In this document: positions 1,900 through 46,819 of the stretch, piece by piece
How the letters are laid out: each line of letters opens with the position of its first letter
How positions within the stretch are numbered: position 1 is the stretch's first letter
DNA from: Haplodiscus bocki
Taxonomy: Eukaryota
Assembly: GCA_965655095.1 (NCBI GenBank)
Contig: OZ296648.1
Location: 104,718,001 to 104,782,000 of the forward strand
DNA length: 64,000 nt
Direction of reading: 5' to 3'
Notes under the pieces: model-generated
Seen by the model: the letters and a program-made list of their open reading frames with translations, nothing else
What the model was told of the DNA's origin: nothing
Database searches by the model: none
Made by a program: the position numbers and the translations under genes

Positions 1900-4800
1900 A
1901 ACTGCTGACATTGTCAAATTTTCAATGGACTGGTTGGATCGAAACTTGAAATTGAAGAGCCGCGTTGATCACTTGAAAGCTTCAAATGTCTTCACAAGGA
2001 ACTTTTTCAAATGCATACTGAAAAAACCAATCAATCCAAGTTCTCGATTGAATCTATTCAAGATATGCATTCGACCAATATTAGGTTATAGCAATGAAGT
2101 ATGGTATAACAGCAAACCATCTTTTCTAATTGGTTTGTGCTAGAATAAAAAAAATTTAAATCTCAGAAAAAGAATAGATTTTTAAAACAATTTTTTTTAC
2201 AACACTCGACTTTCGTTCAACACAGAGAGCATCGTTTTCGAAAAAATAACAACGTATCTGACTTCTGTAGACTGTGGTCACTCTTTGAATCCAGTAAGTC
2301 TGGATAGGCGTATCAGTGTTTGCCGAAATTGTCTTCGGATTTCATATGTGAGTTATGAACAGGCAAGAATGGATTGCAAGAAGGACTTCATAAACTTTGT
2401 TCAAGCAAGAACTGAGGCAATTTCAAAAATCTCAACCGAAATTTTACTCACTACACACGGCAAGGTAGGACAGATTCAAAATTAGCGCTATCAGATTAAA
2501 CTGGAATGAAAAATGGCAAAAAAAAGTCAATCTACTGGACAAAACAAAATCCAACAAAGACCAATCTCGACTTTTCAGACTTCTGTTAAAAAAACATGGT
2601 CGAAACGAATTCAAATGAAAACGTTACAAGGCAGAATTTTCTTTATGCTGTTGTGGTAAATACAACACTCCAACGCACCTCATTTTCTTCGGCGAAGTTT
2701 AGCATCGCACGCAGGCAAAATGTTGGGGATCATAAAGGATAACAGAGTCAGGAAACGGATTCAAAAGAAATCGCGCCACTAAAACTATGTATAGCAACTG
2801 ATATACGACTTGAAACTGAGAAATAAAACAAAAGACCCAGGTATTGCTACCTTTTTGACCTGGAGAAAGCGTTCGACTCGATATATCATGATCTAAAATT
2901 GTGCTGCTTATTGCAGAGAAGTATACGGCGAAGAACAATTCCGTTCACTGAAAACCTTTTGAAAGCAAAAGAAGCTAGCATCAGAGTGATTGATAACCGC
3001 GAAACAACGTTCGACCCATCAGTTGGCGTTCCCGGCGTGATGTTTTATCGCTTTTGTTTTTCATCCTTTTTTTTGAAGGGTGTCAATGAAAAATACGAAA
3101 CGAAACAAATTAAAAAAACTGCTGATGATAATTCCAACTTCTGTAGACCCAGTGAAGTAACTCAAAGTTTTGACGCTTCCTAAGAGTTTAGCAGAAAATG
3201 TAGACTTGTGAATAAGGATCCCCAATTTGAACAGATGTTGTTTAATGTACAGATTACTGCTGATCAATAGCAAACTGCTGACAATGTCAAATTTTCAATG
3301 GATTGGTTGGATCGAAACTTGAAATTGAAGAGCCGCATTGATCAGTTGAAAGATTCAAATGTCTTCACAAGGAACACTTTCAAATGCAAACTGAAACAAC
3401 CAATCAATCCAAATTCTCGATTGAAACTATTCAAGATACGTGTTCGACCAACATTAGATTTTAGCAAAAAATATGGTACAACAGCAACGAATCATTTCTA
3501 TTGGTCTGTGTTAGATTGCGAACACAACCATTATATCTTCGAAAAACAACAGATTTTAAAAAGATTTTGTATTTACAACACTCGAATTTCAATGACCACA
3601 GAGAGTATATTTCATGAAAAATTGTCAATGTATCTGACTTCTGTAGACTGTGCTCGCTCTTTGAATCTAGTAATTCTGGATAGGCTTATCAGTGTTAGCC
3701 GAAATTGTCTTCGGATTTCATATGTGAGCAATGAACAGGAAAGAATGGATTGCATGAAAGACTTCATAAACTTTGTTCAAGCAAGAAAAGAGGCAACCTC
3801 AAAACTCTCAACCAAAACTGCTCTCACTACACACGGCAATGTAAGACAGACTAAAAATAAGCGCTATCAGATTACTGTGGAATGAAAAATGGCAAAAAAA
3901 TTGCGAAACTACTGGACAAAACAAAATCCAACAAAGAACAATCTCAACTTTTCAGACTTCTGTTAAAAAAAGGTGGTCGAAACGAATTCAAATGAAAACG
4001 TTAGAAGGCAGTATTTTTGTTATGCTGTTGTGGTAGATACGACACTCCAACGCACAACATTTTCTTGTGCGAAGTTTAGCATCGCACGCAGGCAAAATGT
4101 TGGGGAGCTTAATCGATAACAGAATCAGAAAAAGGTTTCAAAAAAAGTCGCGCCACCAGAACTATGTATAGCAACTGATATACGACTTGAAACTGAGAAA
4201 TAAAACACAAGACCCATGTATTGCTACATTTCTTGACCTGGAGATAACGTTCGAGTCAAAATATCATGATCTAAGTTTGTGCTGCTTATTGGAAAGAAGT
4301 ATACGGCGTAGAACGAATCCGTTGACTGAAAACCTTCTGAAAACAAGAGAAGCTACCATCAGAGTGGTTGATAACCGCGAAACAACGTTCGACCCATCAA
4401 TTTGCGTTCCCCGGCGTGATGTTTTATCTTCTTGTTTTTCCTCCTTTTCCTGAAAGGTGTCCCTGAAAAAAAAGACACAAAACAAAGTAAGAAAACGCTG
4501 ATGATAACACCAACTTCTGTTGCCCCAGTGAATTAACTCAAAGTTTTGACGCTCCCTAAGAGTTTAGCAGAAAATGTAGACTTGTGAATAAAGATGCCTA
4601 AACTGAACAGATGTTGTTTAATGTACAGAATACAGCTGATCAATAGCAAACTGCTGACAATGTCAAATTTTCAATTGATTGGTTGGATCGAAACTTGAAA
4701 TTGAAGAGCCGCGTTGATCAGTTGAAAGCTTCAAATGTCTTCACAAGGAACACTTTCAAATGCATACTGAAACAACCAATCAATCCAAGTTCTCGATTGA

Positions 4801-7600
4801 AGCTATTCAAGATATGCATTCGACCAATATTAGGTTATAGCAATGAAGTATGGTATAACAGCAAACCATCTTTTCTAATTGGTTTGTGCTAGAATAAAAA
4901 AAAATTAAATCTCAGAAAAAGAATAGATTTTTAAAACAATTTATTTTACAACACTCGACTTTCGTTCAACACAGAGAGCATCGTTTTCGAAAAAATAACA
5001 ACGTATCTGACTTCTGTAGACTGTGGTCACTCTTTGAATCCAGTAAGTCTGGATAGGCGTATCAGTGTTTGCCGAAATTGTCTTCGGATTTCATATGTGA
5101 GTTATGAACAGGCAAGAATGGATTGCAAGAAGGACTTCATAAACTTTGTTCAAGCAAGAACTGAGGCAATTTCAAAAATCTCAACCGAAATTTTACTCAC
5201 TACACACGGCAAGGTAGGACAGATTCAAAATTAGCGCTATCAGATTAAACTGGAATGAAAAATGGCAAAAAAAAGTCAATCTACTGGACAAAACAAAATC
5301 CAACAAAGACCAATCTCGACTTTTCAGACTTCTGTTAAAAAAACATGGTCGAAACGAATTCAAATGAAAACGTTACAAGGCAGAATTTTCGTTATGCTGT
5401 TGTGGTAAATACAACACTCCAACGCACCTCATTTTCTTCGGCGAAGTTTAGCATCGCACGCAGGCAAAATGTTGGGGATCATAAAGGATAACAGAGTCAG
5501 GAAACGGATTCAAGAGAAATCGCGCCACTAAAACTATGTATAGCAACTGATATACGACTTGAAACTGAGAAATAAAACAAAAGACCCAGGTATTGCTACC
5601 TTTTTGACCTGGAGAAAGCGTTCGACTCGATATATCATGATCTAAAATTGTGATGCTTATTGCAGAGAAGTATACGGCGAAGAACAATTCCGTTCACTGA
5701 AAACCTTTTGAAAACAAAAGAAGCTAGCATCAGAGTGATTGATAACCGCGAAACAACGTTCGACCCATCAGTTGGCGTTCCCGGCGTGATGTTTTATCGC
5801 TTTTGTTTTTCATCCTTTTTTTTGAAGGGTGTCATTGAAAAATACGAAACGAAACAAATTAAAAAAACTGCTGATGATAATTCCAACTTCTGTAGACCCA
5901 GTGAAGTAACTCAAAGTTTTGACGCTTCCTAAGAGTTTAGCAGAAAATGTAGACTTGTGAATAAGGATCCCCAATTTGAACAGATGTTGTTTAATGTACA
6001 GATTACTGCTGATCAATAGCAAACTGCTGACAATGTCAAATTTTCAATGGATTGGTTGGATCGAAACTTGAAATTGAAGAGCCGCATTGATCAGTTGAAA
6101 GATTCAAATGTCTTCACAAGGAACACTTTCAAATGCAAACTGAAACAACCAATCAATCCAAATTCTCGATTGAAACTATTCAAGATACGTGTTCGACCAA
6201 CATTAGATTTTAGCAAAAAATATGGTACAACAGCAACGAATCATTTCTATTGGTCTGTGTTAGATTGCGAACACAACCATTATATCTTCGAAAAACAACA
6301 GATTTTAAAAAGATTTTGCATTTACAACACTCGAATTTCAATGACCACAGAGAGTATATTTCATGAAAAATTGTCAATGTATCTGACTTCTGTAGACTGT
6401 GCTCGCTCTTTGAATCTAGTAATTGTGGATAGGCTTATCAGTGTTAGCCGAAATTGTCTTCGGATTTCATATGTGAGCAATGAACAGGAAAGAATGGATT
6501 GCATGAAAGACTTCATAAACTTTGTTCAAGCAAGAAAAGAGGCAACCTCAAAACTCTCAACCAAAACTGCTCTCACTACACACGGCAATGTAAGACAGAC
6601 TAAAAATAAGCGCTATCAGATTACTGTGGAATGAAAAATGGCAAAAAAATTGCGAAACTACTGGACAAAACAAAATCCAACAAAGAACAATCTCAACTTT
6701 TCAGACTTCTGTTAAAAAAAGGTGGTCGAAACGAATTCAAATGAAAACGTTAGAAGGCAGTATTTTTGTTATGCTGTTGTGGCAGATACGACACTCCAAC
6801 GCACAACATTTTCTTGTGCGAAGTTTAGCATCGCACGCAGGCAAAATGTTGGGGAGCTTAATCGATAACAGAATCAGAAAAAGGTTTCAAAAAAAGTCGC
6901 GCCACCAGAACTATGTATAGCAACTGATATACGACTTGAAACTGAGAAATAAAACACAAGACCCATGTATTGCTACATTTCTTGACCTGGAGATAACGTT
7001 CGAGTCAAAATATCATGATCTAAGTTTGTGCTGCTTATTGGAAAGAAGTATACGGCGTAGAACAAATCCGTTGACTGAAAACCTTCTGAAAACAAGAGAA
7101 GCTACCATCAGAGTGGTTGATAACCGCGAAACAACGTTCGACCCATCAATTTGCGTTCCCCGGCGTGATGTTTTATCTTCTTGTTTTTCCTCCTTTTCCT
7201 GAAAGGTGTCCCTGAAAAAAAAGACACAAAACAAAGTAAGAAAACGCTGATGATAACACCAACTTCTGTTGCCCCAGTGAATTAACTCAAAGTTTTGACG
7301 CTCCCTAAGAGTTTAGCAGAAAATGTAGACTTGTGAATAAAGATGCCTAAACTGAACAGATGTTGTTTAATGTACAGAATACAGCTGATCAATAGCAAAC
7401 TGCTGACAATGTCAAATTTTCAATTGATTGGTTGGATCGAAACTTGAAATTGAAGAGCCGCGTTGATCAGTTGAAAGCTTCAAATGTCTTCACAAGGAAC
7501 ACTTTCAAATGCATACTGAAACAACCAATCAATCCAAGTTCTCGATTGAAGCAATTCAAGATATGCATTCGGCCAATATTAGGTTATAGCAATGAAGTAT
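1900..7600 (+). repeat. Higher-order block A: dimer, period 2,749 bp
   Basis: Identical or near-identical ORFs lie at exact 2,749-bp offsets (2285/5034, 3298/6047, 4187/6936, 2699/5448), while adjacent monomers differ visibly. Confidence 0.9.
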
Positions 7601-8049
7601 GGTAAAACAGCAAACCATCTTTTCTAATTGGTCTGTGCTAGAATGCAAAAAAAATTAAATCTCACAAAAATATTAGATTTTCAAAACAATTTATTTTACA
7701 ATACTCGACTTTCGTTCAAGACAGAGAGCATCGTTTTCGAAAACATGTCAACGTATCTGACTTCTGTAGACTGTGGTCACTCTTTGAATCTAGTAACTCT
7801 GGATAGGCGTACCAGTGTTTGCCGAAATTGTCTTCGGATTTCATATGTGAGTTGTGAACAGGCAAAAATGGATTGCAAGAAAGACTTCATAAACTTTGTT
7901 CAAGCAAGAACTGAGGCAATTTCAAAAATCTCAACCGAAATTACTCTCACTACACACGGCAATGTGAGACAGATTCAAAATTAGCGCTATAAGATTAAGC
8001 TGGAATGAAAAATGGCAAAAAAATATGTGAATCTACTGGACAAAACAAA

Positions 8050-11000
8050 ATCCAACAAAGACTAATCTCGACTTTTCAGACTTCTGTTAAAAAAACATGG
8101 TCGGAATGAATTCAAATGAAAACGTTAGAAGGCAGAATTTTCGTTATGCCGTTGTGGTAAATACGACACTCCAACGCGCTTCATTTTCTTCCGCGAAGTT
8201 TAGCATCGCACGCAGGCAAAATGTTGGGGATCATAAAGGATAACAGAGTCAGGAAACGGATTCAAAAGAAATCGCGCCACTAAAACTATGTATAGCAACT
8301 GATATACGACTTGAAACTGAGAAAAAAAACAAAAGACCCATGTATTGCTACATTTCTTGACCTGGAGAAAACGTTCGACTCGATATATCATGATCTAAAA
8401 TTGTGCTGCTTATTGCAGAGAAGTATACGGCGAAGAACAATTCCGTTCACTGAAAACCTTCTGAAAACAAAAGAAGCTACCATCAGAGTGACTGATATCC
8501 TCGAAACAACGTTCGACCCATCAATTGGCGTTCCCGACGTGATGTTTTATCGCTTTTGTTTTTCATCCTTTTTTTGAAGGGTGCCATTGAAAAATACGAA
8601 ACGAAACAAATTAAAAAAAACTGCTGATGATAATTCCAACTTCTGTAGACCCAGTGAATTAACTCAAAGTTTTGACGCTCCCTAAGAGTTTAGAAGAAAA
8701 TGTAGACTTGTGAAGAAAGATCCCCAAATTGAACAGATGTTGTTTAATGTACAGAATACAGCTGATCAATAGCAAACGCTGACATTGTCAAACTTTCATT
8801 GGATTGATTGGATCGAAACTTGAAACTGAAGAACCGCGTTGACCAGTTGAAAGCTCCAAATGTCTTCACGAGGAGCACTTTCAAATGCATACTGAAACAA
8901 CCAATCAATCCAAGTTCTCAATTGAAACTATTCAAGATACGTATTCGACCAACATTAGATTTTAGTAAAAAAATATGGTACAACAGCAACGAATCATTTC
9001 AATTGATCTGTGTTAGATTGCGAACACAACCATTATATCTTCGAAAAACAACAGATTTTAAAAACATTTTGTATTTACAACACTCGAATTTCAATGACCA
9101 CAGAGAGTGTATTTTATGAAAAAATGTCAACGTATCTGACTTCTGTAGACTGTGCTCGCTCTTTGAATCTAGTAATTCTGGATAGGCGTATCAGTGTTTG
9201 CAAAAATTGTCTTCGGATTTCATATGTGAATTGTGAACAGGCAAGAATGGATTGCATTAAAGACTTCATAAACTTTGTTCAAGCAAGAAATGAGGCAACC
9301 TCAAAACTCTCAACCAAAATTGCTCTCACTGTACACGGCAATGTAAGACAGATTCAAAATAAGCGCTATCAGATTACTGTGGAATGAAAAATGGCAAAAA
9401 AATTGTGAATCTACTGGACAAAACAAAGTACAACAACGAACAATCTCGACTTTTCAGACTTCTGTTTAAAAATGCGGTCGAAACGAATTCAATTGAAAAC
9501 GTTAGAAGGCAGTATTTTTGTTAGGCTGTTGTGGTAAATACGACACTCCAACGCACTTCATTTTCTTCTGCGAAGTTTGGCATCGCACGCAGGCAAAATT
9601 TTGGGGAGCATAATCGATAACGGAATCAGAAAAAGGTTTCAAAAGAAGTCGCGCCACCAGAACTATGAATAGCAACTGATATACGACTTGAAACTGAGAA
9701 ATAAAACAAAAGACCCATGTATTGCTACCTTTTGGACCTGGAGAAAACGTTCGACTCAAAAAATGATGATCTAAAATTGTACTGCTTATTGCAGAGAAGT
9801 ATACGCCAAAGAACAATTCCGTTCACTGAAAACCTTCTGAAGACAAAAGAAGCTACCATCAGAGTGATTGATATCCGCGAAACAACGTTCGACCCATCAA
9901 TTGGCGTTCCGCGGGTTGATCTTTTATCTCTTTTGTTTTTCATGCAATTTTTTGAAGGGTGTCATTGAAAAATACGAAACGAAACAAATTAAAACAAAAC
10001 GTTGATGATAACACCAACTTCTGTTGCCCCAGTGAATTAACTCAAAGTTTTGACGCTCTCTAAGAGTTTAGCAGAAAATGAAGACTTGTGAAAAAAGTCC
10101 TCTAAACTGAACCGTTGTTGTTTAATGTACAGAATACAGCTGGTCAATAGCAAACTGCGGACACTGTCAAGTTTTCAGCGGATTGGTTGGATCGAAACTT
10201 GAAATTGAAGGGCCGCGTTGATCAGTTGAAAGCTTCAAATGTCTTCACAAGGAACACTTTCAAAAGCATACTGAAACAGCCAATCAATCCAAGTTCTCGA
10301 TTGAAGCCATTCAAGATATGCATTCGAGCAACTTTAGGTTATAGCAATGAAGTATGGTATAACAGCAAACCATCTATTCTAGTTGGTCTGTGTTAGAATG
10401 CAAAAAAATTAAATCTCAGAAAAATAATAGATTTTTAAAACAATTTGTTTTACAACACGCGACTTTCGTCCAACACAGAGAGCATCGTTTTCGAAAACAT
10501 GTCAACGTATCTGACTTCTGTAGACTGTGGTCGCTCTTTGAATCCAGTAAGTCTGGATAGGCGTATCATTGTTTACCGAAATCTTCACCGGATTTCATAT
10601 GTGAGTTATGAACAGGCAAGAATGGATTGCATGAAAGACTTCATAAACTTTGTTCAAGCAAAAACTGAGGCAATTTCAAAAATCTCCACTAAAATTACTC
10701 TCACTACACACGGCAATGTAAGACAGATTCAAAATAAGCGCTATCAGATTACTGTGGAATGAAAGATGGCAAAAAAATTGTGAATCTACTAGACAAAACA
10801 AAATCTAACAAAGAACAATCTCGACTTTTCAGACTTCTGTTAAAAAAATGTGGTCGAAACGAATTCAAATGAAAACGTTAGAAGGCAGAATTTTCGTTAT
10901 GCCGTTGTGGTAAATACGACACTCCAACGCACTTCATTTTCTTCCGCGAAGTTTAGCATCGCACGCAGGCAAAATGTTGGGGATCATAAAGGATAACAGA

Positions 11001-14000
11001 GTCAGGAAACGGATTCAAAAGAAATCGCGCCACTAAAACTATGTATAGCAACTGATATACGACTTGAAACTGAGAAAAAAAACAAAAGACCCATGTATTG
11101 CTACATTTCTTGACCTGGAGAAAACGTTCGACTCGATATATCATGATCTAAAATTGTGCTGCTTATTGCAGAGAAGTATACGGCGAAGAACAATTCCGTT
11201 CACTGAAAACCTTCTGAAAACCAAAGAAGCTACCATTAGAGTGATTGATATCCGCGAAACAACGTTCTACCCATCAATTGGCGTTCCCCGGGTTGATGTT
11301 TTATCGCTTTTGTTTTTCATCCTTTTTTTGAAGGGTGTCATTGAAAAATACGAAACGAAACAAATTAAAAAAAGTGCTGATGATAATTCCAACTTCTGTA
11401 GACCCAGTGAATTAACTCAAAGTTTTGACGCTCCCTAAGAGTTTAGCAGAAAATGTAGACTTGTGAAGAAAGATCCCCAAATTGAACAGATGTTTATTAA
11501 TGTACAGAATACAGCTGATCAATAGCAAACGCTGACATTGTCAAATTTTCAGTGGATTGATTGGATCGAAACTTGAAACTGAAGAACCGCGTTGACCAGT
11601 TGAAAGCTCCAAATGTCTTCACGAGGAGCACTTTCAAATGCATACTGAAACAACCAATCAATCCAAGTTCTCGATTGAAACTATTCAAGATACGTATTCG
11701 ACCAACATTAGATTTTAGTAAAAAAATATGGTACAACAGCAACGAATCATTTCAATTGGTCTGTGTTAGATTGCGAACACAACCATTATATCTTCGAAAA
11801 ACAACAGATTTTAATAACATTTTGTATTTACAACACTCGAATTTCAATGACCACAGAGAGTGTATTTTATGAAAAAATGTCAACGTATCTGACTTCTGTA
11901 GACTGTGCTCGCTCTTTGAATCTAGTAATTCTGGATAGGCGTATCAGTGTTTGCAAAAATTGTCTTCGGATTTCATATGTGAATTGTGAACAGGCAAGAA
12001 TGGATTGCATTAAAGACTTCATAAACTTTGTTCAAGCAAGAAATGAGGCAACCTCAAAACTCTCAACCAAAATTGCTCTCACTGTACACGGCAATGTAAG
12101 ACAGATTCAAAATAAGCGCTATCAGATTACTGTGGAATGAAAAATGGCAAAAAAATTGTGAATCTACTGGACAAAACAAAGTACAACAACGAACAATCTC
12201 GACTTTTCAGACTTCTGTTAAAAAATGCGGTCGAAACGAATTCAATTGAAAACGTTAGAAGGCAGTATTTTTGTTAGGCTGTTGTGGTAAATACGACACT
12301 CCAACGCACTTCATTTTCTTCTGCGAAGTTTGGCATCGCACGCAGGCAAAATTTTGGGGAGCATAATCGATAACGGAATCAGAAAAAGGTTTCAAAAGAA
12401 GTCGCGCCACCAGAACTATGAATAGCAACTGATATACGACTTGAAACTGAGAAATAAAACAAAAGACCCATGTATTGCTACCTTTTGGACCTGGAGAAAA
12501 CGTTCGACTCAAAAAATGATGATCTAAAATTGTACTGCTTATTGCAGAGAAGTATACGCCAAAGAACAATTCCGTTCACTGAAAACCTTCTGAAGACAAA
12601 AGAAGCTACCATCAGAGTGATTGATATCCGCGAAACAACGTTCGACCCATCAATTGGCGTTCCGCGGGTTGATCTTTTATCTCTTTTGTTTTTCATGCAA
12701 TTTTTTGAAGGGTGTCATTGAAAAATACGAAACGAAACAAATTAAAACAAAACGTTGATGATAACACCAACTTCTGTTGCCCCAGTGAATTAACTCAAAG
12801 TTTTGACGCTCTCTAAGAGTTTAGCAGAAAATGAAGACTTGTGAAAAAAGTCCTCTAAACTGAACCGTTGTTGTTTAATGTACAGAATACAGCTGGTCAA
12901 TAGCAAACTGCGGACACTGTCAAGTTTTCAGCGGATTGGTTGGATCGAAACTTGAAATTGAAGGGCCGCGTTGATCAGTTGAAAGCTTCAAATGTCTTCA
13001 CAAGGAACACTTTCAAAAGCATACTGAAACAGCCAATCAATCCAAGTTCTCGATTGAAGCCATTCAAGATATGCATTCGAGCAACTTTAGGTTATAGCAA
13101 TGAAGTATGGTATAACAGCAAACCATCTATTCTAGTTGGTCTGTGTTAGAATGCAAAAAAATTAAATCTCAGAAAAATAATAGATTTTTAAAACAATTTG
13201 TTTTACAACACGCGACTTTCGTTCAACACAGAGAGCATCGTTTTCGAAAACATGTCAACGTATCTGACTTCTGTAGACTGTGGTCGCTCTTTGAATCCAG
13301 TAAGTCTGGATAGGCGTATCATTGTTTACCGAAATCTTCACCGGATTTCATATGTGAGTTATGAACAGGCAAGAATGGATTGCATGAAAGACTTCATAAA
13401 CTTTGTTCAAGCAAAAACTGAGGCAATTTCAAAAATCTCCACTAAAATTACTCTCACTACACACGGCAATGTAAGACAGATTCAAAATAAGCGCTATCAG
13501 ATTACTGTGGAATGAAAGATGGCAAAAAAATTGTGAATCTACTAGACAAAACAAAATCTAACAAAGAACAATCTCGACTTTTCAGACTTCTGTTAAAAAA
13601 ATGTGGTCGAAACGAATTCAAATGAAAACGTTAGAAGGCAGAATTTTCGTTATGCCGTTGTGGTAAATACGACACTCCAACGCACTTCATTTTCTTCCGC
13701 GAAGTTTAGCATCGCACGCAGGCAAAATGTTGGGGATCATAAAGGATAACAGAGTCAGGAAACGGATTCAAAAGAAATCGCGCCACTAAAACTATGTATA
13801 GCAACTGATATACGACTTGAAACTGAGAAAAAAAACAAAAGACCCATGTATTGCTACATTTCTTGACCTGGAGAAAACGTTCGACTCGATATATCATGAT
13901 CTAAAATTGTGCTGCTTATTGCAGAGAAGTATACGGCGAAGAACAATTCCGTTCACTGAAAACCTTCTGAAAACCAAAGAAGCTACCATTAGAGTGATTG

Positions 14001-21900: not shown

Positions 21901-24900
21901 GAAAACCTAAGAAGGTAGAATTTTTGTTATGCTGTTGTGGTAAATACGACACTCCAACGCACTTCATTTTGTTCGGCGACGTTTAGCATCGCACGCAGGC
22001 AGAATGTTGCGGAGCATAATGGATAACAGAATCAGAAAATGGATTCAAAAAAAGTCGCGCCACTAGAACTACGTATAGCAACTGATATACGACTTGAAAC
22101 TGAGAAATGAAACAAAAGACCCTTGTATTGCTACCTTTTTGACCTGGAGAAAGCGTTCGACTCGGAATAACATGATCTAAATTTGTGCTGCTTATTGCAG
22201 AGAAGTATACGGCGAAGAACAGTTCCGTTGACTGAAAACCTTCTGGAAACAAGAGAAGCTACCATCACATCGATTGATAACCGGGAAACAACGTTCGAAA
22301 CATCATTTGGCGTTACCCGGCGTGATGTTTTATCTCTTTTGTTTTCCATCCTCTTTCTGAAGGGTGTCATTGAAAAATACGAAACGAAACAAATTTAAAA
22401 AAAAACGCTGATGACAATTCCAACCTCTGTAGCCCCAGTGATATAAATCAAAGTTCTGGCGCTCCTTTAGAGTTTAGAGGAAAATGTACTTGTTAGTAAG
22501 TATCCCCAAATTGAACAGATGATGTTTAAAGTACAGAATACAGCTGATCAATAGCAAACTGCTGACATTGTCAAACTTTCAATGGATTGGTTGGATCGAA
22601 ACTTGAAACTGAAGAGCAGCGTTTATCAGTTGAAAACTCCAAATTCTTCACAAGGAACACTTTTAAACGCATAGTGAAACAACTGATCAATCCGAGGTCT
22701 TGATTGAAACTATTCAAGATACGTATTCGAGCAACATTAGATTTTATGATTAAAAGAATGGTACAACAGCAACCCATCTATTCTAATTGGTCTGTGTTAG
22801 AATGCAAAAATATCTTCTAAAAACAATAGGTTTTAAAAACGTTTTAGTTTTTACAACACTCGGCTTTCGTTCACCACAGATAGTTTGTTTTTCGAAAACA
22901 TGTCAACGTATCTGGCTTCTGTAGACTGTGCTCATTCTTTGAATCCAGTAAACTTGGATAGGCGTATCAGTTTTTGTCGAAATCGTCTTTGGATTTCATT
23001 AATGATTTATCAACAAGCAAGGAAGGATTGCATGAAAGACTTCATAAATTTTGTTCAATCAAGAACTGAGGCAACCTCAAAACTCTCAACCGAAATCACT
23101 CTCGCTATACACGGCAATGTAAGACAGATTCAAAATAAGCGCTATCAGATTACTGTGGAATGAAAGATGGCAAAAAAATTGTGAATCTACTAGACAAAAC
23201 AAAATCTAACAAAGAACAATCTCGACTTTTCAGACTTCTGTTAAAAAAATGTGGTCGAAACGAATTCAAATGAAAACGTTAGAAGGCAGACTTTTCGTTA
23301 TGCTGTTGTGGTAAATACGACACACCAACGCACTTCATTTTCTTCGGCGAAGTTTAGCATCGCACGCAGGCAAATTGTTCGGGAGCATAATGGTTAACAG
23401 AATCAGAAGATGGATTCAAAAAAAGTCGCGCCACCAGAACTATGTATAGCAACTGATATACGACTTGAAACTGAGAAATAAAACAAAAGACCCATGTATT
23501 GCTACATTTCTTGACCTGGAGAAAACTTTCGACTCAAAATATCATGATCTAAAATTGTGCTGCTTATTGCAGAGAAGTATACGGCGAAGAACAATTCCGT
23601 TCACTGAAAACCTTCCGAAAACAAAAGAAGCTACCATCAGAGAGATTGATATCCGCGAAGCAACGTTCGACCCATCAATTGGCGTTCCCCGGGTTGATCT
23701 TTTATCTCTTTTGTTTTTCATGCAATTTTTTGGAGGGTGTCATCGAAAAATACGAAACGAAAAAAATTTAAAAAAAACGCTGATGATAACACCAACTTCT
23801 GTTGCCCCAGTGAATTAACTCAAAGTTTTGACGCTCTCTAAGAGTTTAGCAGAAAATGTAGACTTGTTAATAAAGTTCCCTAAACTGAACAGATGTTGTT
23901 TAATGTACAGAATACAGCTGATCAATAGCAAACTGCGGACATTGTCAAATTTTCAGCGGATTGGTTGGATCGAAACTTGAAATTGAAGAGCCGCGTTGAT
24001 CAGTTGAAAGCTCCAAATGTCTTCACAAGGAACACTTTCGAAAGCATACTGAAACAGCCAATCAATCCAAGTTCTCGATTGAAGCTATTCAACATATGCA
24101 TTCGACCAACATTAGGTTATAGCAATGAAGTATGTTATAACAGCAACGCATCATTTCTAATTGGTCTTTGTTAGAATGCAAACATAACCATTTTATCTTC
24201 GAAAAACAAAAGGTTTTAAAAACATTTTGTTTTCACAACACTCGAATTTTGTTCAAGACAGAGAGTATATTTTAGGAAAACATGTCAACGTATCTGACTT
24301 CCGTAGACAGTGCTCGCTCTTTGAATCTGGTAAATCTGGATAGGCGTATCAGGGTTTGCCGAAATTGTCTTCGGATTTCATATGTGAGTTATGAACAGGC
24401 AAGAAAGGATTGCATGAAAGACTTCATAAACTTCGTTCAAGCAAGAACTGAGGCAACGTGAAACCTCTCAACCAAATTTACTCTCAATAAACACGGCAAT
24501 TTGAGACAGATTCAAAATAGGCGCTATCAGATTACTGTGGAATGAAAAACGGCAAAAAACTTGTGAACCTACTGGACAAAACAAAATCCAACAAAGAACA
24601 ATCTCGACTTTTCAGACTTCTCGTAAGAGAACGTGGTCGAAACGAATTCAATTGAAAACGTTAGATACCAAAATTTTCGTTAGGGTGTTGTGGTAAATAC
24701 GACAGTCCAACGCACTTCATTTTCTTCGGCGAAGTTTAGCATCGCACGCAGGCAAATTGTTCGGGAGCATAATGGATAACAGAATCAGAAGATGGATTCA
24801 AAAAAAGTCGCGCCACCAGAACTATGTATAGCAACTGCTATACGACTTGAAACTGAGAAATAAAACAAAAGACCCATGTATTGCTACGTTTTTTGACCTG

Positions 24901-27300
24901 GAGAAAACGTTCGACTCCATATATCATGATCTAAAATTGTGCTGCTTATTGGAAAAAAGTATACGTCGTAGAGCAAATCCGTTGACTGAAAACTTTTTGA
25001 TAACAAAAAAAGCTACCATCAGAGTGATTGATATCCGGTAAAAAACGTTCGACCCATCAATTGGCGTTCCCCGTTGTGATATTATATCTCTTTTGTGGAG
25101 ATGCTTCATCCTTCTTCTGAAGGGTGTCCTTGAAAAATACAAAAGGAAACAAAGTAAAAGAAACGCTGATGATAAAACCAACTTCTGTTGCCCCAGTGAT
25201 TTAACTCAAAGCTTTGACGCTCCTTAAGAGTTTAGCAGAAAATGTAGACTTGTGAATAAAGATCCCTAAATGAACAGGTGTTGTTTAAACTACAAAATAC
25301 AACAGTTGATCAATAGCAAACTGCTGACATTGTCGAACTTTCAGTAGAATGGTTGGATGGAAACTTGAAACTGAAGAGCCGCGTTGATTAGTTGCAAGCT
25401 CCCAATATCTTCACAAGGAACACTTTTGAATGCATACTGAAACAAGCAATCCATCCAAGTTCTCGATTGAGACTATTCAAGATATGTATTCGACCAATAT
25501 TAGATTATAGTAAAAAAGTATGGTATAACAGCAACCCATCTATTCTAATTGGTCTGTGTTAGAATGCAAAAAAACTTTAAATCTTACAAAAGAAATAGAT
25601 TTTTGAAACAATTTTTTTTACAACACTCGACTTTCGTTCACCATAGAGAATTTGTTTTTCGAAAACATGTCAACGTATCTGACTTCTGTACACTGTGCTC
25701 GTTCTTTGAATCTAGTAACTTGGGATAGGCGTATCAGTGTTTGCCGAAATCATCTCCCGATTTCATTTGTGATTTATCATTAGGCAAGGATGGATTGCAT
25801 GAAGGACTTCATCAACTTTGTTCAAGCAAGAACTGAGACAACCTCATAACTCTCAACCGAAATTACTCCCACTATACATGGCAAAGTGACACAGATTCAA
25901 AATAAGCGCTATCAGATTACTGTGGAACGAAAATGGCAGAAAAATGTGAATCCACTGGACAAAACAAAGTCCAACAAAAACGAATCTCGACTTCTTAGAA
26001 TTCTGGTATAAAAACGTGGTCGGAACGAATTCAAATGAAAACCTAAGAAGGCAGAATTTTCGTTATGCTGTTGTGGTAAATACGACACTCCAACGCACTT
26101 CATTTTGTTCGGCGACGTTTAGCATCGCACGCAGGCAAAATGTTGCGGAGCATAATGGATAACAGAATCAGAAAATGGATTCAAAAATCGTCGCGCCACT
26201 AGAATTATGTATAGCAACTGATATACGACTTGAAACTGAGAAATAAAACAAAAGACCCTTGTATTGCTACCTTTCTGACCTGGAGAAAGCGTTCGACTCG
26301 GAATAACATGATCTAAATTTGTGCTGCTTATTGCAGAGAAGTATACGGCGAAGAACAGTTCCGTTGACTGAAAACCTTCTGGAAACAAGAGAAGCTACCA
26401 TCACATCGATTGATAACCGGGAAACAACGTTCGAAACATCATTTGGCGTTACCCGGCGTGATGTTTTATCTCTTTTGTTTTCCATCCTCTTTCTGAAGGG
26501 TGTCATTGAAAAATACGAAACGAAACAAATTTAAAAAAAAACGCTGATGACAATTCCAACCTCTGTAGCCCCAGTGATATAAATCAAAGTTCTGACGCTC
26601 CTTTAGAGTTTAGAGGAAAATGTACTTGTTAGTAAGTATCCCCAAATTGAACAGATGATGTTTAAAGTACAGAATACAGCTGATCAATAGCAAACTGCTG
26701 ACATTGTCAAACTTTCAATGGATTGGTTGGATCGAAACTTGAAACTGAAGAGCAGCGTTTATCAGTTGAAAACTCCAAATTCTTCACAATGAACACTTTT
26801 AAACGCATAGTGAAACAACTGATCAATCCGAGGTCTTGATTGAAACTATTCAAGATACGTATTCGAGCAACATTAGATTTTATGATTAAAAGAATGGTAC
26901 AACAGCAACCCATCTATTCTAATTGGTCTGTGTTAGAATGCAAAAATATCTTCTAAAAACAATAGGTTTTAAAAACGTTTTAGTTTTTACAACACTCGGC
27001 TTTCGTTCACCACAGAGAGTTTGTTTTTCGAAAACATGTCAACGTATCTGGCTTCTGTAGACTGTGCTCATTCTTTGAATCCAGTAAACTTGGATAGGCG
27101 TATCAGTTTTTGTCGAAATCGTCTTTGGATTTCATTAATGATTTATCAACAAGCAAGGAAGGATTGCATGAAAGACTTCATAAATTTTGTTCAATCAAGA
27201 ACTGAGGCAACCTCAAAACTCTCAACCGAAATCACTCTCGCTATACACGGCAATGTAAGACAGATTCAAAATAAGCGCTATCAGATTACTGTGGAATGAA
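19000..27300 (+). repeat. Higher-order block C: trimer, period ~4,136-4,140 bp, 2 copies
   Basis: ORF pairs 19325/23465, 19827/23965, 21983/26119, 22183/26319 and 22885/27021. Private variants such as ctcttttgtggagatgcttcatcc occur only at ~20,950 and ~25,090. Confidence 0.92.
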
Positions 27301-30300
27301 AAATGGCAAAAAAATTGTGAATCTACTGGACAAAACAAAATCTAACAAAGAAAAATCTCGACTTTTCAGACTTCTGTTAAAAAAATGTGGTCGAAACGAA
27401 TTCAAATGAAAACGTTAGAAGGCAGACTTTTCGTTATGCTGTTGTGGTAACTACGACACACCAACGCACTTCATTTTCTTCGGCGAAGTTTAGCATCGCA
27501 CGCAGGCAAATTGTTCGGGAGCATAATGGATAACAGAATCAGAAGATGGATTCAAAAAAAGTCGCGCCACTAGAACTATGTATAGCAACTGATATACGAC
27601 TTGAAACTGACAAAGAAAACAAAAGACCCATGTACTGCTACCTTTTTGACCTGAAGGAAGCGTTCGACTCGACACATCATGATCTAAGTTTGTGCTGCTT
27701 TTTTGCAGAGAAGTATACGTCAAAGAACAATTCCGTTGATTGAAAACCTTCTGAAAACCAAAGAAGCTACCATTAGAGTGATTGATATCCGCGAAACAAC
27801 GTTCTACCCATCAATTGGCGTTCCCCGGGTTGATGTTTTATCTCTTTTGTTTTTCATCCAAATTTTTTGAAGGGTGTCATTGAAAAATACGAAACGAAAC
27901 AATTTAAAAAGAAACGCTGATGATAAAACAAACCTCTGTAGCCCCAGTGAAATAACTCAAAGTTTTGACGCTCCCTAATAGCTTAGCAGAAAATGTAGAC
28001 TTGTGGTTAAGGATCCCCAAACTAAACAGACGTTGTTTAATGTACTGAATACAGCTGATCAAAAGGAAACTGCTGACATTGTCAAGTTTTCAATGGACTG
28101 GTTGGAACGAAACTTGAAACTGAAGAACCCCGTTGATCAGTTGAAAACTCCAAATGTCTTCACAAGGAACACTTTTAAATGCATACTGAAACAACCAATC
28201 AATCCAAATTCTCGATTGAAACTATTCAAGTTACGTATTCGACCAACATTGGATTTTAGTGATAAAGTATGGTACAACAGCAACCCATCATTTTTAATTG
28301 GTCTGTGTTAGAATGCAAAAACAACCATCATATCTTCGAAAAACATCAGTTTTTATAAACTTTTTAATCTTACAACACTCGACTTTTGTTCACCATAGAG
28401 AGTGTATTTTTTGAAAACATGTCAACGTATCTGACTTCTGTAGACTGTGCCCGTTCTTTGAATCTAGTAAATCTGGATAGGCGTATCAATGTTTACCGAA
28501 ATCTTCAACGGATTTCATATGTGAGTTATGAACAGGCAAGAATGGATTGCATGAAAGACTTCATAAACTTTGTTCAAGCAAGAACTGAGGCAACCTCAAA
28601 AATCTCAACCGAAATTACTCTCACCACACACGGCAATGTGAGACAGATTCAAAATTAGCGCTATCAGATTAAGCTGGAATGAAGAATGGCAAAAAATTGT
28701 GAATCTACTGGACAAAACAAAATCTAACAAAGAAAAATCTCGACTTTTCAGACTTCTGTTAAAAAAATGTGGTCGAAACGAATTCAAATGAAAACGTTAG
28801 AAGGCAGACTTTTCGTTATGCTGTTGTGGTAAATGCGACACACCAACGCACTTCATTTTCTTCGGCGAAGTTTAGCATTGCACGCAGGCAAATTGTTCGG
28901 GAGCATAATGGATAACAGAATCAGAAGATGGATTCAAAAAAAGTCGCGCCACTAGAACTATGTATAGGAACTGATATACGACTTGAAACTGACAAAGAAA
29001 ACAAAAGACCCATGTATTGCTACCTTTTTGACCTGAAGAAAGCGTTCGACTCGACACATCATGATCTAATTTTGTGCTGCTTTTTTGCAGAGAAGTATAC
29101 GTCAAAGAACAATTCCGTTGACTGAAAACCTTCTGAAAACCAAAGAAGCTACCATTAGAGTGATTGATATCCGCGAAACAACGTTCTACCCATCAATTGG
29201 CGTTCCCCGGGTTGATGTTTTATCTCTTTTGTTTTTCATCCAATTTTTTGAAGGGTGTCATTGAAAAATACGAAACGAAACAATTTAAAAAGAAACGCTG
29301 ATGATAAAACAAACCTCTGTAGCCCCAGTGAAATAACTCAAAGTTTTGACGCTCCCTAATAGCTTAGCAGAAAATGTAGACTTGTGGTTAAGGATCCCCA
29401 AACTAAACAGACGTTGTTTAATGTACTGAATACAGCTGATCAAAAGGAAACTGCTGACATTGTCAAGTTTTCAGTGGACTGGTTGGAACGAAACTTGAAA
29501 CTGAAGAACCCCGTTGATCAGTTGAAAACTCCAAATGTCTTCACAAGGAACACTTTTAAATGCATACTGAAACAACCAATCAATCCAAATTCTCGATTGA
29601 AACTATTCAAGATACGTATTCGACCAACATTGGATTTTAGTGATAAAGTATGGTACAACAGCAACCCATCATTTTTAATTGGTCTGTGTTAGAATGCAAA
29701 AACAACCATCATATCTTCGAAAAACATCAGGTTTTATAAACTTTTTAATCTTACAACACTCGACTTTTGTTCACCATAGAGAGTGTATTTTTTGAAAACA
29801 TGTCAACGTATCTGACTTCTGTAGACTGTGCCCGTTCTTTGAATCTAGTAAATCTGGATAGGCGTATCATTGTTTACCGAAATCTTCACCGGATTTCATA
29901 TGTGAGTTATGAACAGGCAAGAATGGATTGCATGAAAGACTTCATAAACTTTGTTCAAGCAAGAACTGAGACAACCTCAAAAATCTCAACCGAAATTACT
30001 CTCACCACACACGGCAATGTGAGACAGATTCAAAATTAGCGCTATCAGATTAAGCTGGAATGAAAAATGGCAAAAAATTGTGAATCTACTGGACAAAACA
30101 AAATCTAACAAAGAAAAATCTCGACTTTTCAGACTTCTGTTAAAAAAATGTGGTCGAAACGAATTCAAATGAAAACGTTAGAAGGCAGACTTTTCGTTAT
30201 GCTGTTGTGGTAAATACGACACACCAACGCACTTCATTTTCTTCGGCGAAGTTTAGCATCGCACGCAGGCAAATTGTTCGGGAGCATAATGGATAACAGA

Positions 30301-32700
30301 ATCAGAAGATGGATTCAAAAAAAGTCGCGCCACTAGAACTATGTATAGCAACTGATATACGACTTGAAACTGACAAAGAAAACAAAAGACCCATGTATTG
30401 CTGCGTTTTTGACCTGAAGAAAGCGTTCGACTCGACACATCATGATCTAAGTTTGTGCTGCTTTTTTGCAGAGAAGTATACGTCAAAGAACAATTCCGTT
30501 GACTGAAAACCTTCTGAAAACCAAAGAAGCTACCATTAGAGTGATTGATATCCGCGAAACAAAGTTCTACCCATCAATTGGCGTTCCCCGGGTTGATGTT
30601 TTATCTCTTTTGTTTTTCATCCAATTTTTTGAAGGGTGTCATTGAAAAATACGAAACGAAACAATTTAAAAAGAAACGCTGATGATAAAACAAACCTCTG
30701 TAGCCCCAGTGAAATAACTCAAAGTTTTGACGCTCCCTAATAGCTTAGCAGAAAATGTAGACTTGTGGTTAAGGATCCCCAAACTAAACAGACGTTGTTT
30801 AATGTACTGAATACAGCTGATCAAAAGGAAACTGCTGACATTGTCAAGTTTTCAGTGGACTGGTTGGAACGAAACTTGAAACTGAAGAACCCCGTTGATC
30901 AGTTGAAAACTCCAAATGTCTTCACAAGGAACACTTTTAAATGCATACTGAAACAACCAATCAATCCAAATTCTCGATTGAAACTATTCAAGATACGTAT
31001 TCGACCAACATTGGATTTTAGTGATAAAGTATGGTACAACAGCAACCCATCATTTTTAATTGGTCTGTGTTAGAATGCAAAAACAACCATCATATCTTCG
31101 AAAAACATCAGTTTTTATAAACTTTTTAATCTTACAACACTCGACTTTTGTTCACCATAGAGAGTGTCTTTTTTGAAAACATGTCAACGTATCTGACTTC
31201 TGTAGACTGTGCCCGTTCTTTGAATCTAGTAAATCTGGATAGGCGTATCATTGTTTACCGAAATCTTCACCGGATTTCATATGTGAGTTATGAACAGGCA
31301 AGAATGGATTGCATGAAAGACTTCATAAACTTTGTTCCAGCAAGAACTGAGGCAACCTCAAAAATCTCAACCGAAATTACTCTCACCACACACGGCAATG
31401 TGAGACAGATTCAAAATTAGCGCTATCAGATTAAGCTGGAATGAAAAATGGCAAAAAATTGTGAATCTGCTGGACAAAACAAAATCTAACAAAGAAAAAT
31501 CTCGACTTTTCAGACTTCTGTTAAAAAAATGTGGTCGAAACGAATTCAAATGAAAACGTTAGAAGGCAGACTTTTCGTTATGCTGTTGTGGTAAATACGA
31601 CACACCAACGCACTTCATTTTCTTCGGCGAAGTTTAGCATCGCACGCAGGCAAATTGTTCGGGAGCATAATGGATAACAGAATCAGAAGATGGATTCAAA
31701 AAAAGTCGCGCCACTAGAACTATGTATAGCAACTGATATACGACTTGAAACTGACAAAGAAAACAAAAGACCCATGTATTGCTACCTTTTTGACCTGAAG
31801 AAAGCGTTCGACTCGACACATCATGATCTAATTTTGTGCTGCTTTTTTGCAGAGAAGTATACGTCAAAGAACAATTCCGTTGACTGAAAACCTTCTGAAA
31901 ACCAAAGAAGCTACCATTAGAGTGATTGATATCCGCGAAACAACGTTCTACCCATCAATTGGCGTTCCCCGGGTTGATGTTTTATCTCTTTTGTTTTTCA
32001 TCCAATTTTTTGAAGGGTGTCATTGAAAAATACGAAACGAAACAATTTAAAAAGAAACGCTGATGATAAAACAAACCTCTGTAGCCCCAGTGAAATACCT
32101 CAAGTTTTGACGCTCCCTAATACCTTAGCAGAAAATGTAGACTTGTGGTTAAGGATCCCCAAACTAAACAGACGTTGTTTAATGTACTGAATACAGCTGA
32201 TCAAAAGGAAACTGCTGACATTGTCAAGTTTTCAATGGACTGGTTGGAACGAAACTTGAAACTGAAGAACCCCGTTGATCAGTTGAAAACTCCAAATGTC
32301 TTCACAAGGAACACTTTTAAATGCATACTGAAACAACCAATCAATCCAAATTCTCGATTGAAACTATTCAAGTTACGTATTGGACCAACATTGGATTTTA
32401 GTGATAAAGTATGGTACAACAGCAACCCATCATTTTTAATTGGTCTGTGTTAGAATGCAAAAACAACCATCATATCTTCGAAAAACATCAGTTTTTATAA
32501 ATTTTTTAATCTTACAACACTCGACTTTTGTTCACCATAGACAGTGTATTTTTTGAAAACATGTCAACGTATCTGACTTCTGTAGACTGTGCCCGTTCTT
32601 TGAATCTAGTAAATCTGGATAGGCGTATCATTGTTTACCGAAATCTTCACCGGATTTCATATGTGAGTTATGAACAGGCAAGAATGGATTGCATGAAAGA
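27300..32700 (+). repeat. Block D: four near-identical monomers, period 1,380-1,381 bp
   Basis: ORFs at 28003/29384/30765/32145 and 28386/29767/31148/32528 have almost identical translations. Confidence 0.93.
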
Positions 32701-34638: not shown

Positions 34639-34646
34639 TCTCTCTT

Positions 34647-34719
<73 letters not shown>
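34639..34719. repeat. (CT)n/(GA)n microsatellite, ~80 bp
   Basis: Visible tctctctc run with a few interruptions; it produces the spurious ERER/SLSL ORFs. Confidence 0.97.
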
Positions 34720-34720
<1 letters not shown>

Positions 34721-34722
<2 letters not shown>

Positions 34723-35000
34723 CCTATGGACTTGAAAAGTGTAGTTTTGGCAACTTTGCCGAAAACGTTTGCTAGAAGGCCACAATTTTTGCACTCCGGT
34801 TCCAAAAACGATAAAAAATTATGAAATTTTTGGAAAAAAAGCCTTCAAAAAGTTCCTCTGGACAAACAAAAGCAGTTTGGACACCTGTGCCAAAAGTTTT
34901 TGCCAAAAGGACATTTTTCTTCAGCAATGTCCAGGAAGGTTGACAGAACTATTTTTTCATCAAAAAATTCGTCCTTCCTCAAATTTTTCCTCTTGAATAA
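34721..35000. repeat. Two (possibly three) degenerate copies of a ~130-bp unit
   Basis: tccctatggacttgaaaagtgtagttttggcaactttgccgaaaacgtttgctagaagg (34,721) resembles ttcctctggacaaacaaaagcagtttggacacctgtgccaaaagtttttgccaaaagg (~34,853). Confidence 0.5.
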
Positions 35001-35249
35001 AGCAATTTCCATCAGAACACAAAAGAAAGTTCTCAAAAACGTTCGCAAATAAAAATGCCTTAAAAGTTCGAGCAAAAGCATAGACACAAAATTTGATATT
35101 GAGTATTTTAAAAATGACTTTCTTCCAAATACTTGTATCTCGTGAAAGTACATTTTTTTCTTATTCCGAAAAAATAAAGAGTTGATGATGTTTTTGTCTG
35201 GGACATTTACGCTATCATCTAAAAAACATCTTCGAAATCGGAGCATGGA

Positions 35250-46796: not shown

Positions 46797-46819
46797 GAAC
46801 CCGAAAATCCAATTTGAAA

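What the first reader, a model, noticed from the sequence alone, without database searches (positions are those of the whole stretch)
1900..32700. Alpha-satellite-like layered higher-order structure: dimer A, dimer B, monomer pair, trimer, homogeneous monomers
Seen: the best-match period changes along the array, from 2,749 bp (~1.9-7.6 kb) to 2,753 bp (~8.0-16.0 kb), ~1,378-1,380 bp (~16.6-19.0 kb), ~4,138 bp (~19.0-27.3 kb) and 1,381 bp (~27.3-32.7 kb). Higher-order copies are near-identical while neighbouring monomers are clearly diverged. Known: such higher-order repeats typify primate alpha satellite and arise by out-of-register exchange. Inference: this TE-derived array undergoes active local turnover, although the neighbouring TEs are heavily decayed.
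Basis: seen in the sequence. Interest (0 to 1): 0.72.

Follow-up and report, generated by a model that had tools for sequence, protein, structure and literature searches.

The report
Layered tandem array from a LINE fragment
A dead jumping gene (a LINE retrotransposon) had a 1.38-kb inner piece copied head-to-tail about 47 times at one spot, and blocks of one, two or three copies have since been re-copied; this is a real but ordinary way for satellite DNA to arise.

Summary
Window 1-34386 is the right half of a 69.5-kb, single-locus tandem array (window -35123 to +34386) of 47 units of about 1.38 kb.

**Recent blocks (98.9-99.4% identical; neighbouring units 86-89%)**
- 1801-7632, period 2749
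- 8108-16074, period 2753; one 2.5-kb stretch has a single mismatch
- 16654-18995, period 1380
- 18965-27610, period 4140
- 27316-32752, period 1381

**Origin**
- The unit is an inner piece of the reverse-transcriptase region of a roughly 4.4-kb LINE that carries an APE-type endonuclease.
- The array sits inside one copy of that LINE. The element's upstream part lies on the left. Its last 233 bp and a (CT)n tail lie on the right.
- All 47 units form one clade against dispersed copies, which are 66-74% identical.
- The founding junction shares 4 bp (AGTT).
- No unit keeps an open frame, and substitutions show no codon bias.

**Reading**
This is a neutral, in-place amplification reshaped by out-of-register homologous exchange, in three age layers. 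It resembles alpha satellite in layout only: blocks have 2-4 copies, and nothing points to a centromere.

The scan has already found similar Copia-, Maverick- and Helitron-derived layered arrays elsewhere in this genome. No read-level check of the assembly was possible.

The parts
1..34386 (+). Right half of the tandem array. It holds units U23 (part) to U47 of 47. The whole array is window -35123..34386, that is G000:C1:104682878-104752386.
   Evidence: BLAST of a reference unit against the window plus 50 kb upstream. All copies lie on the + strand. There is no N in the region.
1801..7632 (+). Dimer block A: period 2749, about 2.1 copies, 99.25% identical (units U24-U28, types A-B-A-B-A).
8108..16074 (+). 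Dimer block B: period 2753, about 2.9 copies, 99.41% identical (units U29-U34, types B-C-B-C-B-C). Within it, 9468-12014 and 12221-14767 differ by one base.
16654..18995 (+). Unit pair U35/U36: a 964-bp tract at period 1380, 98.96% identical. The whole units are 97% alike.
18965..27610 (+). Trimer block: period 4140, about 2.1 copies (U37-39 = U40-42 at 100, 98 and 99%). Borders are sharp, and the first 370 bp occur a third time at 27245-27610 (97.6%).
27316..32752 (+). Homogeneous units: period 1381-1382, about 3.9 copies (U43-45 are 99% alike; U46 is 97%).
33010..34386 (+). Last unit, U47. It is the most diverged (84-88% to all others) and runs on without a break into the 3' end of the parent element.
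34387..34619 (+). The last 233 bp of the parent LINE, which are not part of the repeat unit. They end in CATGACAATAAAAG, as in dispersed copies.
34620..34724 (+). CT-rich microsatellite tail of the parent LINE insertion.
   Evidence: Dispersed copies L006, L007, L008 and L012 end in the same kind of tail.
28858..28881 (+). Example of the founding unit junction, ...TTCTTCGGCGA|AGTTTAGCATCGC (break at 28868|28869). It joins element position about 4215 to about 2820 and shares AGTT.
   Evidence: A 120-bp probe across the junction matches only this locus in the genome.

Best explanation
**What it is.** This is a non-coding, single-locus macrosatellite that grew in place inside one old copy of a non-LTR retrotransposon (a LINE with an APE-type endonuclease and a reverse transcriptase).

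**History, shown or inferred.**

1. *Founding duplication.* A 1.41-kb inner segment of the reverse-transcriptase region was duplicated in tandem. The segment is positions about 2820-4215 of the roughly 4.4-kb element. The two break sites share 4 bp (AGTT). This points to an illegitimate, microhomology-type founding event (inferred).

2. *Early amplification.* The duplicate amplified early into many units. These now differ by 11-15% and form a star-like tree base.

3. *Spread of a deletion variant.* A variant with a 32-bp deletion spread over most of the array.

4. *Second junction type.* This junction re-copied the left edge three times, as a 1.6-kb upstream piece of the element plus following units.

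5. *Middle layer.* A two-unit (B-A) pattern spread across about 17 units. Same-type units in it are now about 94-95% alike.

6. *Recent layer.* Out-of-register homologous exchange between misaligned units duplicated tracts of one, two or three units. These tracts tile nearly the whole array and are 0.04-2.5% diverged.

The array carries no detectable function. The units are dead gene fragments drifting neutrally. Exchange homogenises the middle of the array and leaves the edge units most diverged.
For: **The array sits inside one element.**
- The left flank, -36473..-35124, matches element positions 1470-2818.
- The right flank, 34387-34619, matches positions 4215-4454 and is followed by a (CT)n tail.

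**The parent is a LINE.**
- Dispersed copies carry Exo_endo_phos_2 (38.1 bits, above the Pfam cut-off).
- An RVT_1 match lies in the unit (26.6 bits, E 6e-6).
- There is a weak match to the R2 reverse transcriptase, and the nearest Atlas clusters are reverse transcriptases.
- Dispersed copies share the 3' end and differ in their 5' extent.

**Single origin and single locus.**
- All 47 units form a 100/100 clade against six dispersed copies.
- All 40 scored hits of the junction probe fall in C1:104687167-104751067.

**Founding junction.** The junction and the AGTT overlap are shown.

**The 32-bp stretch.** It is present in the outgroups and in U1, U2 and U7-14. It is absent in U3, U4, U6 and U15-47.

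**Layers.**
- Clade B has 9 units (support 100/99), clade A has 6 (95/95) and clade C has 3.
- Identity matrices are; diagonals are.

**Exchange signature.**
- Offsets are whole numbers of units, and border phases are scattered.
- The trimer duplication has sharp borders and a pre-existing similar 370-bp tract at the exchange points.
- Edge units U1 and U47 have the lowest mean identity (86.2%, against about 89-90% in the middle).

**Neutral decay.**
- The longest stop-free stretch is 204 aa.
- Substitutions by codon position are 668/570/654.
- The 32-bp deletion shifts the frame.
- There is no Rfam family and no tRNA.
Against: - No reads could be laid on the array, so the copy number of each block rests on the assembly alone.
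- Four bases of microhomology can arise by chance.
- The star-like tree base could reflect a burst by another mechanism, such as a rolling circle. It could also reflect mosaic units blurring the tree.
- Absence of function is argued only from sequence. Transcription, small RNAs and chromatin were not tested.
- Codon position 2 has somewhat fewer changes than positions 1 and 3 (chi-square p = 0.01). I take this to be a composition effect, but I did not test that.
Confidence: 0.8

Rival explanations
1. Some or all of the near-identical blocks are assembly artefacts. They could be extra passes through a repeat loop, or two haplotypes joined in tandem.
For: - Block divergence of 0.6-1.2% is in the range of heterozygosity for many marine invertebrates.
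- Several blocks have close to two copies.
- No read check was possible.
- No alternative-haplotype contig of the array exists in the assembly for comparison.
Against: - Copy numbers are not uniformly two: about 2.1, 2.9, 2.1, 3.9, and eight units of the 1413-bp type.
- Divergence ranges from 0.04% to 2.5% between blocks.
- Differences between copies are 167 substitutions against 12 one- to two-base indels. That is not the pattern of long-read error.
- There is no N gap anywhere in the 114 kb examined.
- The older 94-95% dimer layer and the tree structure cannot be artefacts.
Confidence: 0.07
2. The founding amplification was a burst, not stepwise exchange. The 1.4-kb segment was excised as a circle closed at the AGTT microhomology and copied by rolling-circle replication. 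The resulting concatemer then recombined back into the parent element. Later layers arose by unequal exchange as in the main reading.
For: - The tree base is star-like, with about 15 lineages leaving one unresolved node at similar depth (0.06-0.09).
- A single junction type is shared by all 1.38-kb units.
- Rolling-circle replication is one of the mechanisms discussed for tandem transposable elements (PMC5932611).
- Several other arrays built from element fragments in this genome were noted by the scan (unchecked).
Against: - In-phase flanks and a single junction are predicted equally by one tandem duplication followed by rapid unequal exchange.
- Low support at the tree base may come from mosaic units.
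- No circle or other direct trace can be seen in the sequence.
Confidence: 0.15
3. The array began with two insertions of the element at the same site (the double-insertion model of McGurk and Barbash) and then expanded.
For: This is the documented route for tandem non-LTR elements such as R1 and jockey dimers in Drosophila (PMC5932611).
Against: - Units lack the element's last 233 bp, its AATAAA block and its (CT)n tail.
- The junction joins two internal positions, with no tail and no target-site duplication.
- The missing 3' end occurs once, after the last unit.
Confidence: 0.02
4. The array is kept because it does something. It might be a centromere-associated repeat (it lies at 53% of a 198-Mb chromosome), or a one-strand source of small RNAs against the LINE family.
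For: - Its mid-chromosome position.
- All units lie in one orientation.
- It shows recent homogenisation.
- CpG is not depleted (observed/expected 1.05).
Against: - It is only 69.5 kb long and occurs at a single locus.
- An apparently intact 323-aa EF-hand reading frame lies about 7 kb from the array's first unit (about 3.6 kb from the last detectable piece of the parent element).
- The target LINE family is long dead (66-74% identity).
- There is no sign of selection on the sequence.
- Other, shorter-unit satellites in this genome are better centromere candidates according to earlier scan notes (unchecked).
Confidence: 0.05

Closest known systems
Primate alpha-satellite higher-order repeats
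   Same: - Units lie head to tail.
- Neighbouring units are clearly diverged (86-89%), while blocks of n units are near-identical (99%).
- The array has age layers, with the most diverged units at its edges.
- The presumed driver is out-of-register exchange.
   Different: - The unit is 1.38 kb, not 171 bp.
- Each block has 2-4 copies, not hundreds to thousands.
- The whole array is 69.5 kb at one locus.
- The unit is a retrotransposon gene fragment.
- There is no evidence of centromere function.
Satellites derived from LINE ORF2 pieces: chicken HinfI/CR1, Phodopus PROsat/L1 and harbour-seal Pvc20/L1, as listed in the review PMC9659126
   Same: The tandem unit is derived from part of the second open reading frame of a non-LTR retrotransposon.
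   Different: - Here the parent copy is still visible on both sides of the array.
- The founding junction can be read.
- The array is small and confined to one locus. It is not a genome-wide satellite family.
Tandem transposable-element arrays formed by double insertion or LTR recombination (McGurk and Barbash 2018, PMC5932611; R1 array of the D. melanogaster X)
   Same: A transposable element supplies the substrate, and later growth is by unequal exchange.
   Different: - The junction here is internal-to-internal, within one element.
- It has no element ends, tails or target-site duplications between units.
- The founding step was therefore an internal tandem duplication, not a double insertion.
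Other layered arrays built from element fragments in this same genome (earlier scan notes: Copia-derived 1.21 kb, Maverick-derived 1.13 kb and 979 bp, and a 1.53-kb array)
   Same: - Kilobase-sized units.
- Arrays of 30-90 kb at single loci.
- A young middle with older edges.
- The unit is a dead piece of a mobile element.
   Different: The parent element here is a LINE.

Membership tests
Higher-order-repeat satellite of the alpha-satellite type | Head-to-tail units in which blocks of n units are far more alike than neighbouring units | tested here: met
   Identity at n+2 or n+3 is 98-99%, against 86-89% at n+1. None of 5000 order shuffles reached the observed excess.
Higher-order-repeat satellite of the alpha-satellite type | One higher-order unit repeated many times to form a long homogeneous domain | tested here: not met
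   Each block has about 2.1-3.9 copies. The array is a patchwork of different short duplications.
Higher-order-repeat satellite of the alpha-satellite type | Roughly nucleosome-sized unit (about 171 bp) | tested here: not met
   The unit is 1372-1414 bp. Tandem Repeats Finder found no period of 500 bp or less at score 200 or above.
Higher-order-repeat satellite of the alpha-satellite type | Centromeric location and binding of centromeric histone | not testable with these tools
   Only position is known (104.7 Mb on a 197.9-Mb chromosome). An EF-hand reading frame lies about 7 kb from the array's first unit.
Satellite or macrosatellite derived from a transposable element | Unit homologous to a dispersed mobile element | tested here: met
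   There are dozens of dispersed matches at 66-74% identity on many chromosomes. The unit matches positions 2820-4215 of the representative copy L009:1223-5676.
Satellite or macrosatellite derived from a transposable element | Units share one origin, distinct from the dispersed copies | tested here: met
   The units form a 100/100 clade of 47 against 6 dispersed copies. The junction probe matches only this locus.
Non-LTR retrotransposon (APE-type LINE) as parent | Apurinic-type endonuclease domain upstream of a reverse transcriptase in one element | tested here: met
   Exo_endo_phos_2 scores 38.1 bits (cut-off 27.4) at L009:2690-3076. RVT_1 lies downstream, inside the unit.
Non-LTR retrotransposon (APE-type LINE) as parent | Reverse-transcriptase domain reaching Pfam's own threshold | tested here: inconclusive
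   The best RVT_1 score is 26.6 bits, against a cut-off of 29.6. Support comes from a match to the R2 protein at E 0.003 and from Atlas reverse-transcriptase clusters. The frames are decayed.
Non-LTR retrotransposon (APE-type LINE) as parent | Copies share a 3' end with a tail and are cut short at the 5' end to varying degrees | tested here: met
   Dispersed copies span 1.1-4.4 kb and end at the same point. The common 3' end carries an AATAAA block followed by a CT-rich tail. The LINE clade was not determined.

The most novel reading that the evidence does not exclude
This genome may have an unusually active way of turning inner fragments of unrelated mobile elements into 30-90-kb single-locus arrays of kilobase units. 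Examples are the LINE here and, by earlier scan notes, Copia, Maverick and Helitron elements. One candidate mechanism is circle formation at microhomologies, followed by rolling-circle copying and recombination back into the parent. The star-like founding burst seen here would be one trace of that mechanism.
Probability: 0.12. Interest if true: 0.55.

Novelty: new member of a known kind. Interest (0 to 1): 0.3.

Why it matters
The array is a clean case history of how satellite DNA is born from a transposable element. The following are all still readable at one 69.5-kb locus:
- the parent element on both sides of the array;
- the founding junction with its 4-bp overlap;
- a 32-bp deletion that marks the lineage that took over;
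- a second junction type;
- three age layers.

That makes it a useful teaching or model locus for unequal-exchange dynamics. It could also serve as a marker whose copy number is likely to vary between individuals. It does not change what is known: satellites derived from LINE ORF2 pieces and higher-order layering outside primates are both documented, and this genome holds several similar arrays.

Tried and rejected
- **Tandem Repeats Finder** found nothing at score 200 or above, because its longest period is 500 bp. I replaced it with k-mer offsets and BLAST.
- **Self-BLAST with identity cut-offs** merged young and old tracts and gave no usable borders. I replaced it with maximal-scoring segments on the unit alignment.
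- **Coding function** is rejected. There is no intact frame, no excess of changes at the third codon position, and most unit reading frames have no Pfam family.
- **RNA-gene array** is rejected. There is no Rfam family and no tRNA.
- **Penelope-like parent** is rejected. The endonuclease is of the APE type and lies upstream of the reverse transcriptase.
- **Double-insertion origin** is rejected on the anatomy of the junction.
- **LINE clade** was not determined. I judged the large protein search not worth its cost for that point.
Full report
**1. Observation**

The window is G000:C1:104718001-104782000 in a 1.5-Gb animal genome.

K-mer spacing is dominated by 2753, 1381, 2749, 1380 and 4136-4140 bp. 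Tandem Repeats Finder saw nothing because its period limit is 500 bp.

BLAST of one unit places 25 head-to-tail copies on the + strand from window 1 to 34392.

Maximal near-identical tracts are:

| Tract | Offset | Identity |
|---|---|---|
| 1801-4883 = 4550-7632 | 2749 | 99.25% |
| 8108-13321 = 10861-16074 | 2753 | 99.41% |
| 16654-17617 = 18034-18995 | 1380 | 98.96% |
| 18965-23474 = 23105-27610 | 4140 | 98.85% |
| 27316-31337 = 28698-32717 | 1382 | 98.98% |

Neighbouring units in the dimer and trimer blocks are 86-89% alike. Units two or three apart are 98-99% alike. No shuffle of unit order out of 5000 reached the observed excess.

The stated range, however, is only part of the object.

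**2. Full extent**

I fetched 50 kb to the left of the window. The array runs from window -35123 to +34386, which is 69.5 kb. It holds 47 units of 1263-1428 bp.

Three 1.6-kb spacers interrupt its left part: -33818..-32203, -28119..-26508 and -23955..-22339. They are 95-97% alike.

The upstream half has its own blocks:
- eight units of a 1413-bp variant at 96-100%;
- two further dimer duplications, with offsets 2745 and 2755.

The recent duplications therefore tile almost the whole array.

A 120-bp probe across the unit junction matches only C1:104687167-104751067. All 40 scored hits, out of 50 candidates, fall there. The array is confined to one locus.

**3. What the unit is**

A search of the genome with one unit finds dozens of dispersed matches at 66-74% identity. 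In them the unit's two halves appear in swapped order. This means the natural start of the unit is at position 869 of my first reference unit.

Ten dispersed copies were fetched. They share homology over as much as 4.4 kb and have a common 3' end.

Evidence that the element is a LINE:
- An Exo_endo_phos_2 endonuclease match above the Pfam cut-off.
- Downstream of it, inside the unit, an RVT_1 match. It is just under the cut-off (26.6 against 29.6 bits, E 6e-6).
- A weak match to a solved R2 retrotransposon protein.
- Reverse-transcriptase clusters as the nearest matches in the Atlas.
- An ending of CATGACAATAAAAG followed by a CT-rich tail.

The parent is therefore an APE-type non-LTR retrotransposon. 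Its clade was not determined. The unit is positions about 2820-4215 of the representative copy L009:1223-5676.

**4. The array lies inside one copy of that element**

Left of the first unit, -36473..-35124 continues with element positions 1470-2818. A further piece, positions 1099-1327, lies at -38566..-38339.

Right of the last unit, 34387-34619 continues with positions 4215-4454, the element's true 3' end. A CT run follows, to 34724.

The spacers are the element's upstream part again, from about position 1190 to 2818. Each is joined to a unit cut at its position 1268. This is a second junction type, identical in all three cases.

The main junction reads ...TTCTTCGGCGA|AGTTTAGCATCGC. Comparison with the two intact edges shows that both break sites contain AGTT.

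The units lack the element's last 233 bp and its tail. There is no target-site duplication between units. The double-insertion route described for tandem non-LTR elements (PMC5932611) therefore does not fit. The founding step was an internal tandem duplication.

**5. History**

A maximum-likelihood tree puts all 47 units in one clade (100/100) against six dispersed copies. The base of that clade is largely unresolved and star-like, with lineages 0.06-0.09 deep.

Within the clade:
- a well-supported type B has 9 units;
- type A has 6 units;
- type C has 3 units;
- these alternate along U18-U34, giving an older two-unit layer in which same-type units are about 94-95% alike.

A 32-bp stretch is present in the dispersed copies and in U1, U2 and U7-14. 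It is deleted in U3, U4, U6 and U15-47. The units that keep it are the ones directly after the element's upstream part (U1, U2, U7), together with U8-U14, an in-place expansion of the U7-type unit. This fits the spacers-plus-first-unit being copies of the original left edge.

The edge units U1 and U47 have the lowest mean identity to the rest (86.2%).

The youngest event left 2547 bp with one mismatch.

**6. Mechanism of the recent layer**

- Offsets are whole numbers of units.
- Borders fall at unit phases 200, 478, 672, 830, 1133, 1200, 1237 and 1287. They are not tied to the founding junction.
- The trimer duplication has sharp borders: 84% identity just outside and 99.7% inside.
- Its first 370 bp occur a third time at 27245-27610 at 97.6%, with 89% just beyond.

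That last pattern is expected if a misaligned exchange took place within a stretch that was already very similar at both points. I infer homologous out-of-register exchange. Replication-based template switching cannot be excluded from sequence alone.

**7. No sign of function**

- The longest stop-free stretch in any unit is 204 aa.
- Inferred substitutions by codon position are 668, 570 and 654, with no third-position excess.
- The dominant variant carries a frame-shifting 32-bp deletion.
- There are no Rfam families and no tRNAs.
- CpG is not depleted (observed/expected 1.05).

**8. Assembly**

There is no N anywhere in the 114 kb examined.

Differences between the near-identical copies are 72 transitions, 95 transversions and only 12 indels of one or two bases. 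Copy numbers and divergences vary from block to block.

These points argue against loop over-traversal or haplotype joins as a general explanation.

The direct test with reads could not be made.

**9. Context and novelty**

Satellites derived from LINE ORF2 pieces are on record: chicken HinfI/CR1, Phodopus PROsat and seal Pvc20 (review PMC9659126). The two-stage model of a small tandem followed by unequal exchange is standard (PMC5932611).

Earlier notes of this scan describe Copia-, Maverick- and Helitron-derived layered arrays elsewhere in this same genome. I did not re-test them.

This is therefore a new member of a known kind. It is well preserved but not surprising. The likeness to alpha satellite is one of layout only.

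**10. Limits**

- No reads, no expression data and no related genomes were available.
- The LINE clade was not determined.
- The star-like founding phase may be a real burst or an effect of mosaic units.

Noticed in passing
L001:6867-7838 (-), that is window -43133..-42162: A single 323-aa open frame with several EF-hand calcium-binding domains (Pfam EF-hand_7, E 7e-20). It is apparently intact and lies about 7 kb left of the array's first unit (about 3.6 kb from the last detectable piece of the parent element). The array therefore lies next to ordinary gene-bearing DNA.
   Followed up: partly
L002:1661-3527 (window -38339..-36473) and L001:5227-6985 (window -44773..-43015): A 1.87-kb piece occurs only twice in the genome. 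The two copies lie 6.4 kb apart in the same orientation and are 98.6-99% identical. One copy sits inside the 5' part of the parent LINE. The other overlaps the last 118 bp or so of the EF-hand frame. This is a local, non-tandem duplication of about the same age as the array's young blocks.
   Followed up: partly
L002:3110-3213 (window about -36890..-36787): A 104-bp insert is present in only one of the two copies of the duplicated piece. It has many 99-100% identical copies on most chromosomes. This suggests a very young, short mobile element (MITE- or SINE-like) that is, or was recently, active.
   Followed up: no
window 1-34386: CpG observed/expected in the unit is about 1.05, and CpG sites change only mildly faster than other sites (1.83 against 1.34 changes per site). 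This repeat shows no methylation-type CpG decay.
   Followed up: no
L003 and L004, window -22338..-11047: Eight units of a 1409-1414-bp variant keep the ancestral 32 bp.
   Followed up: yes
window 39100-52480: An earlier scan note reports a Penelope-like frame split by a foldback element here. It is unrelated to the LINE that gave rise to the array, whose endonuclease is of the APE type.
   Followed up: no
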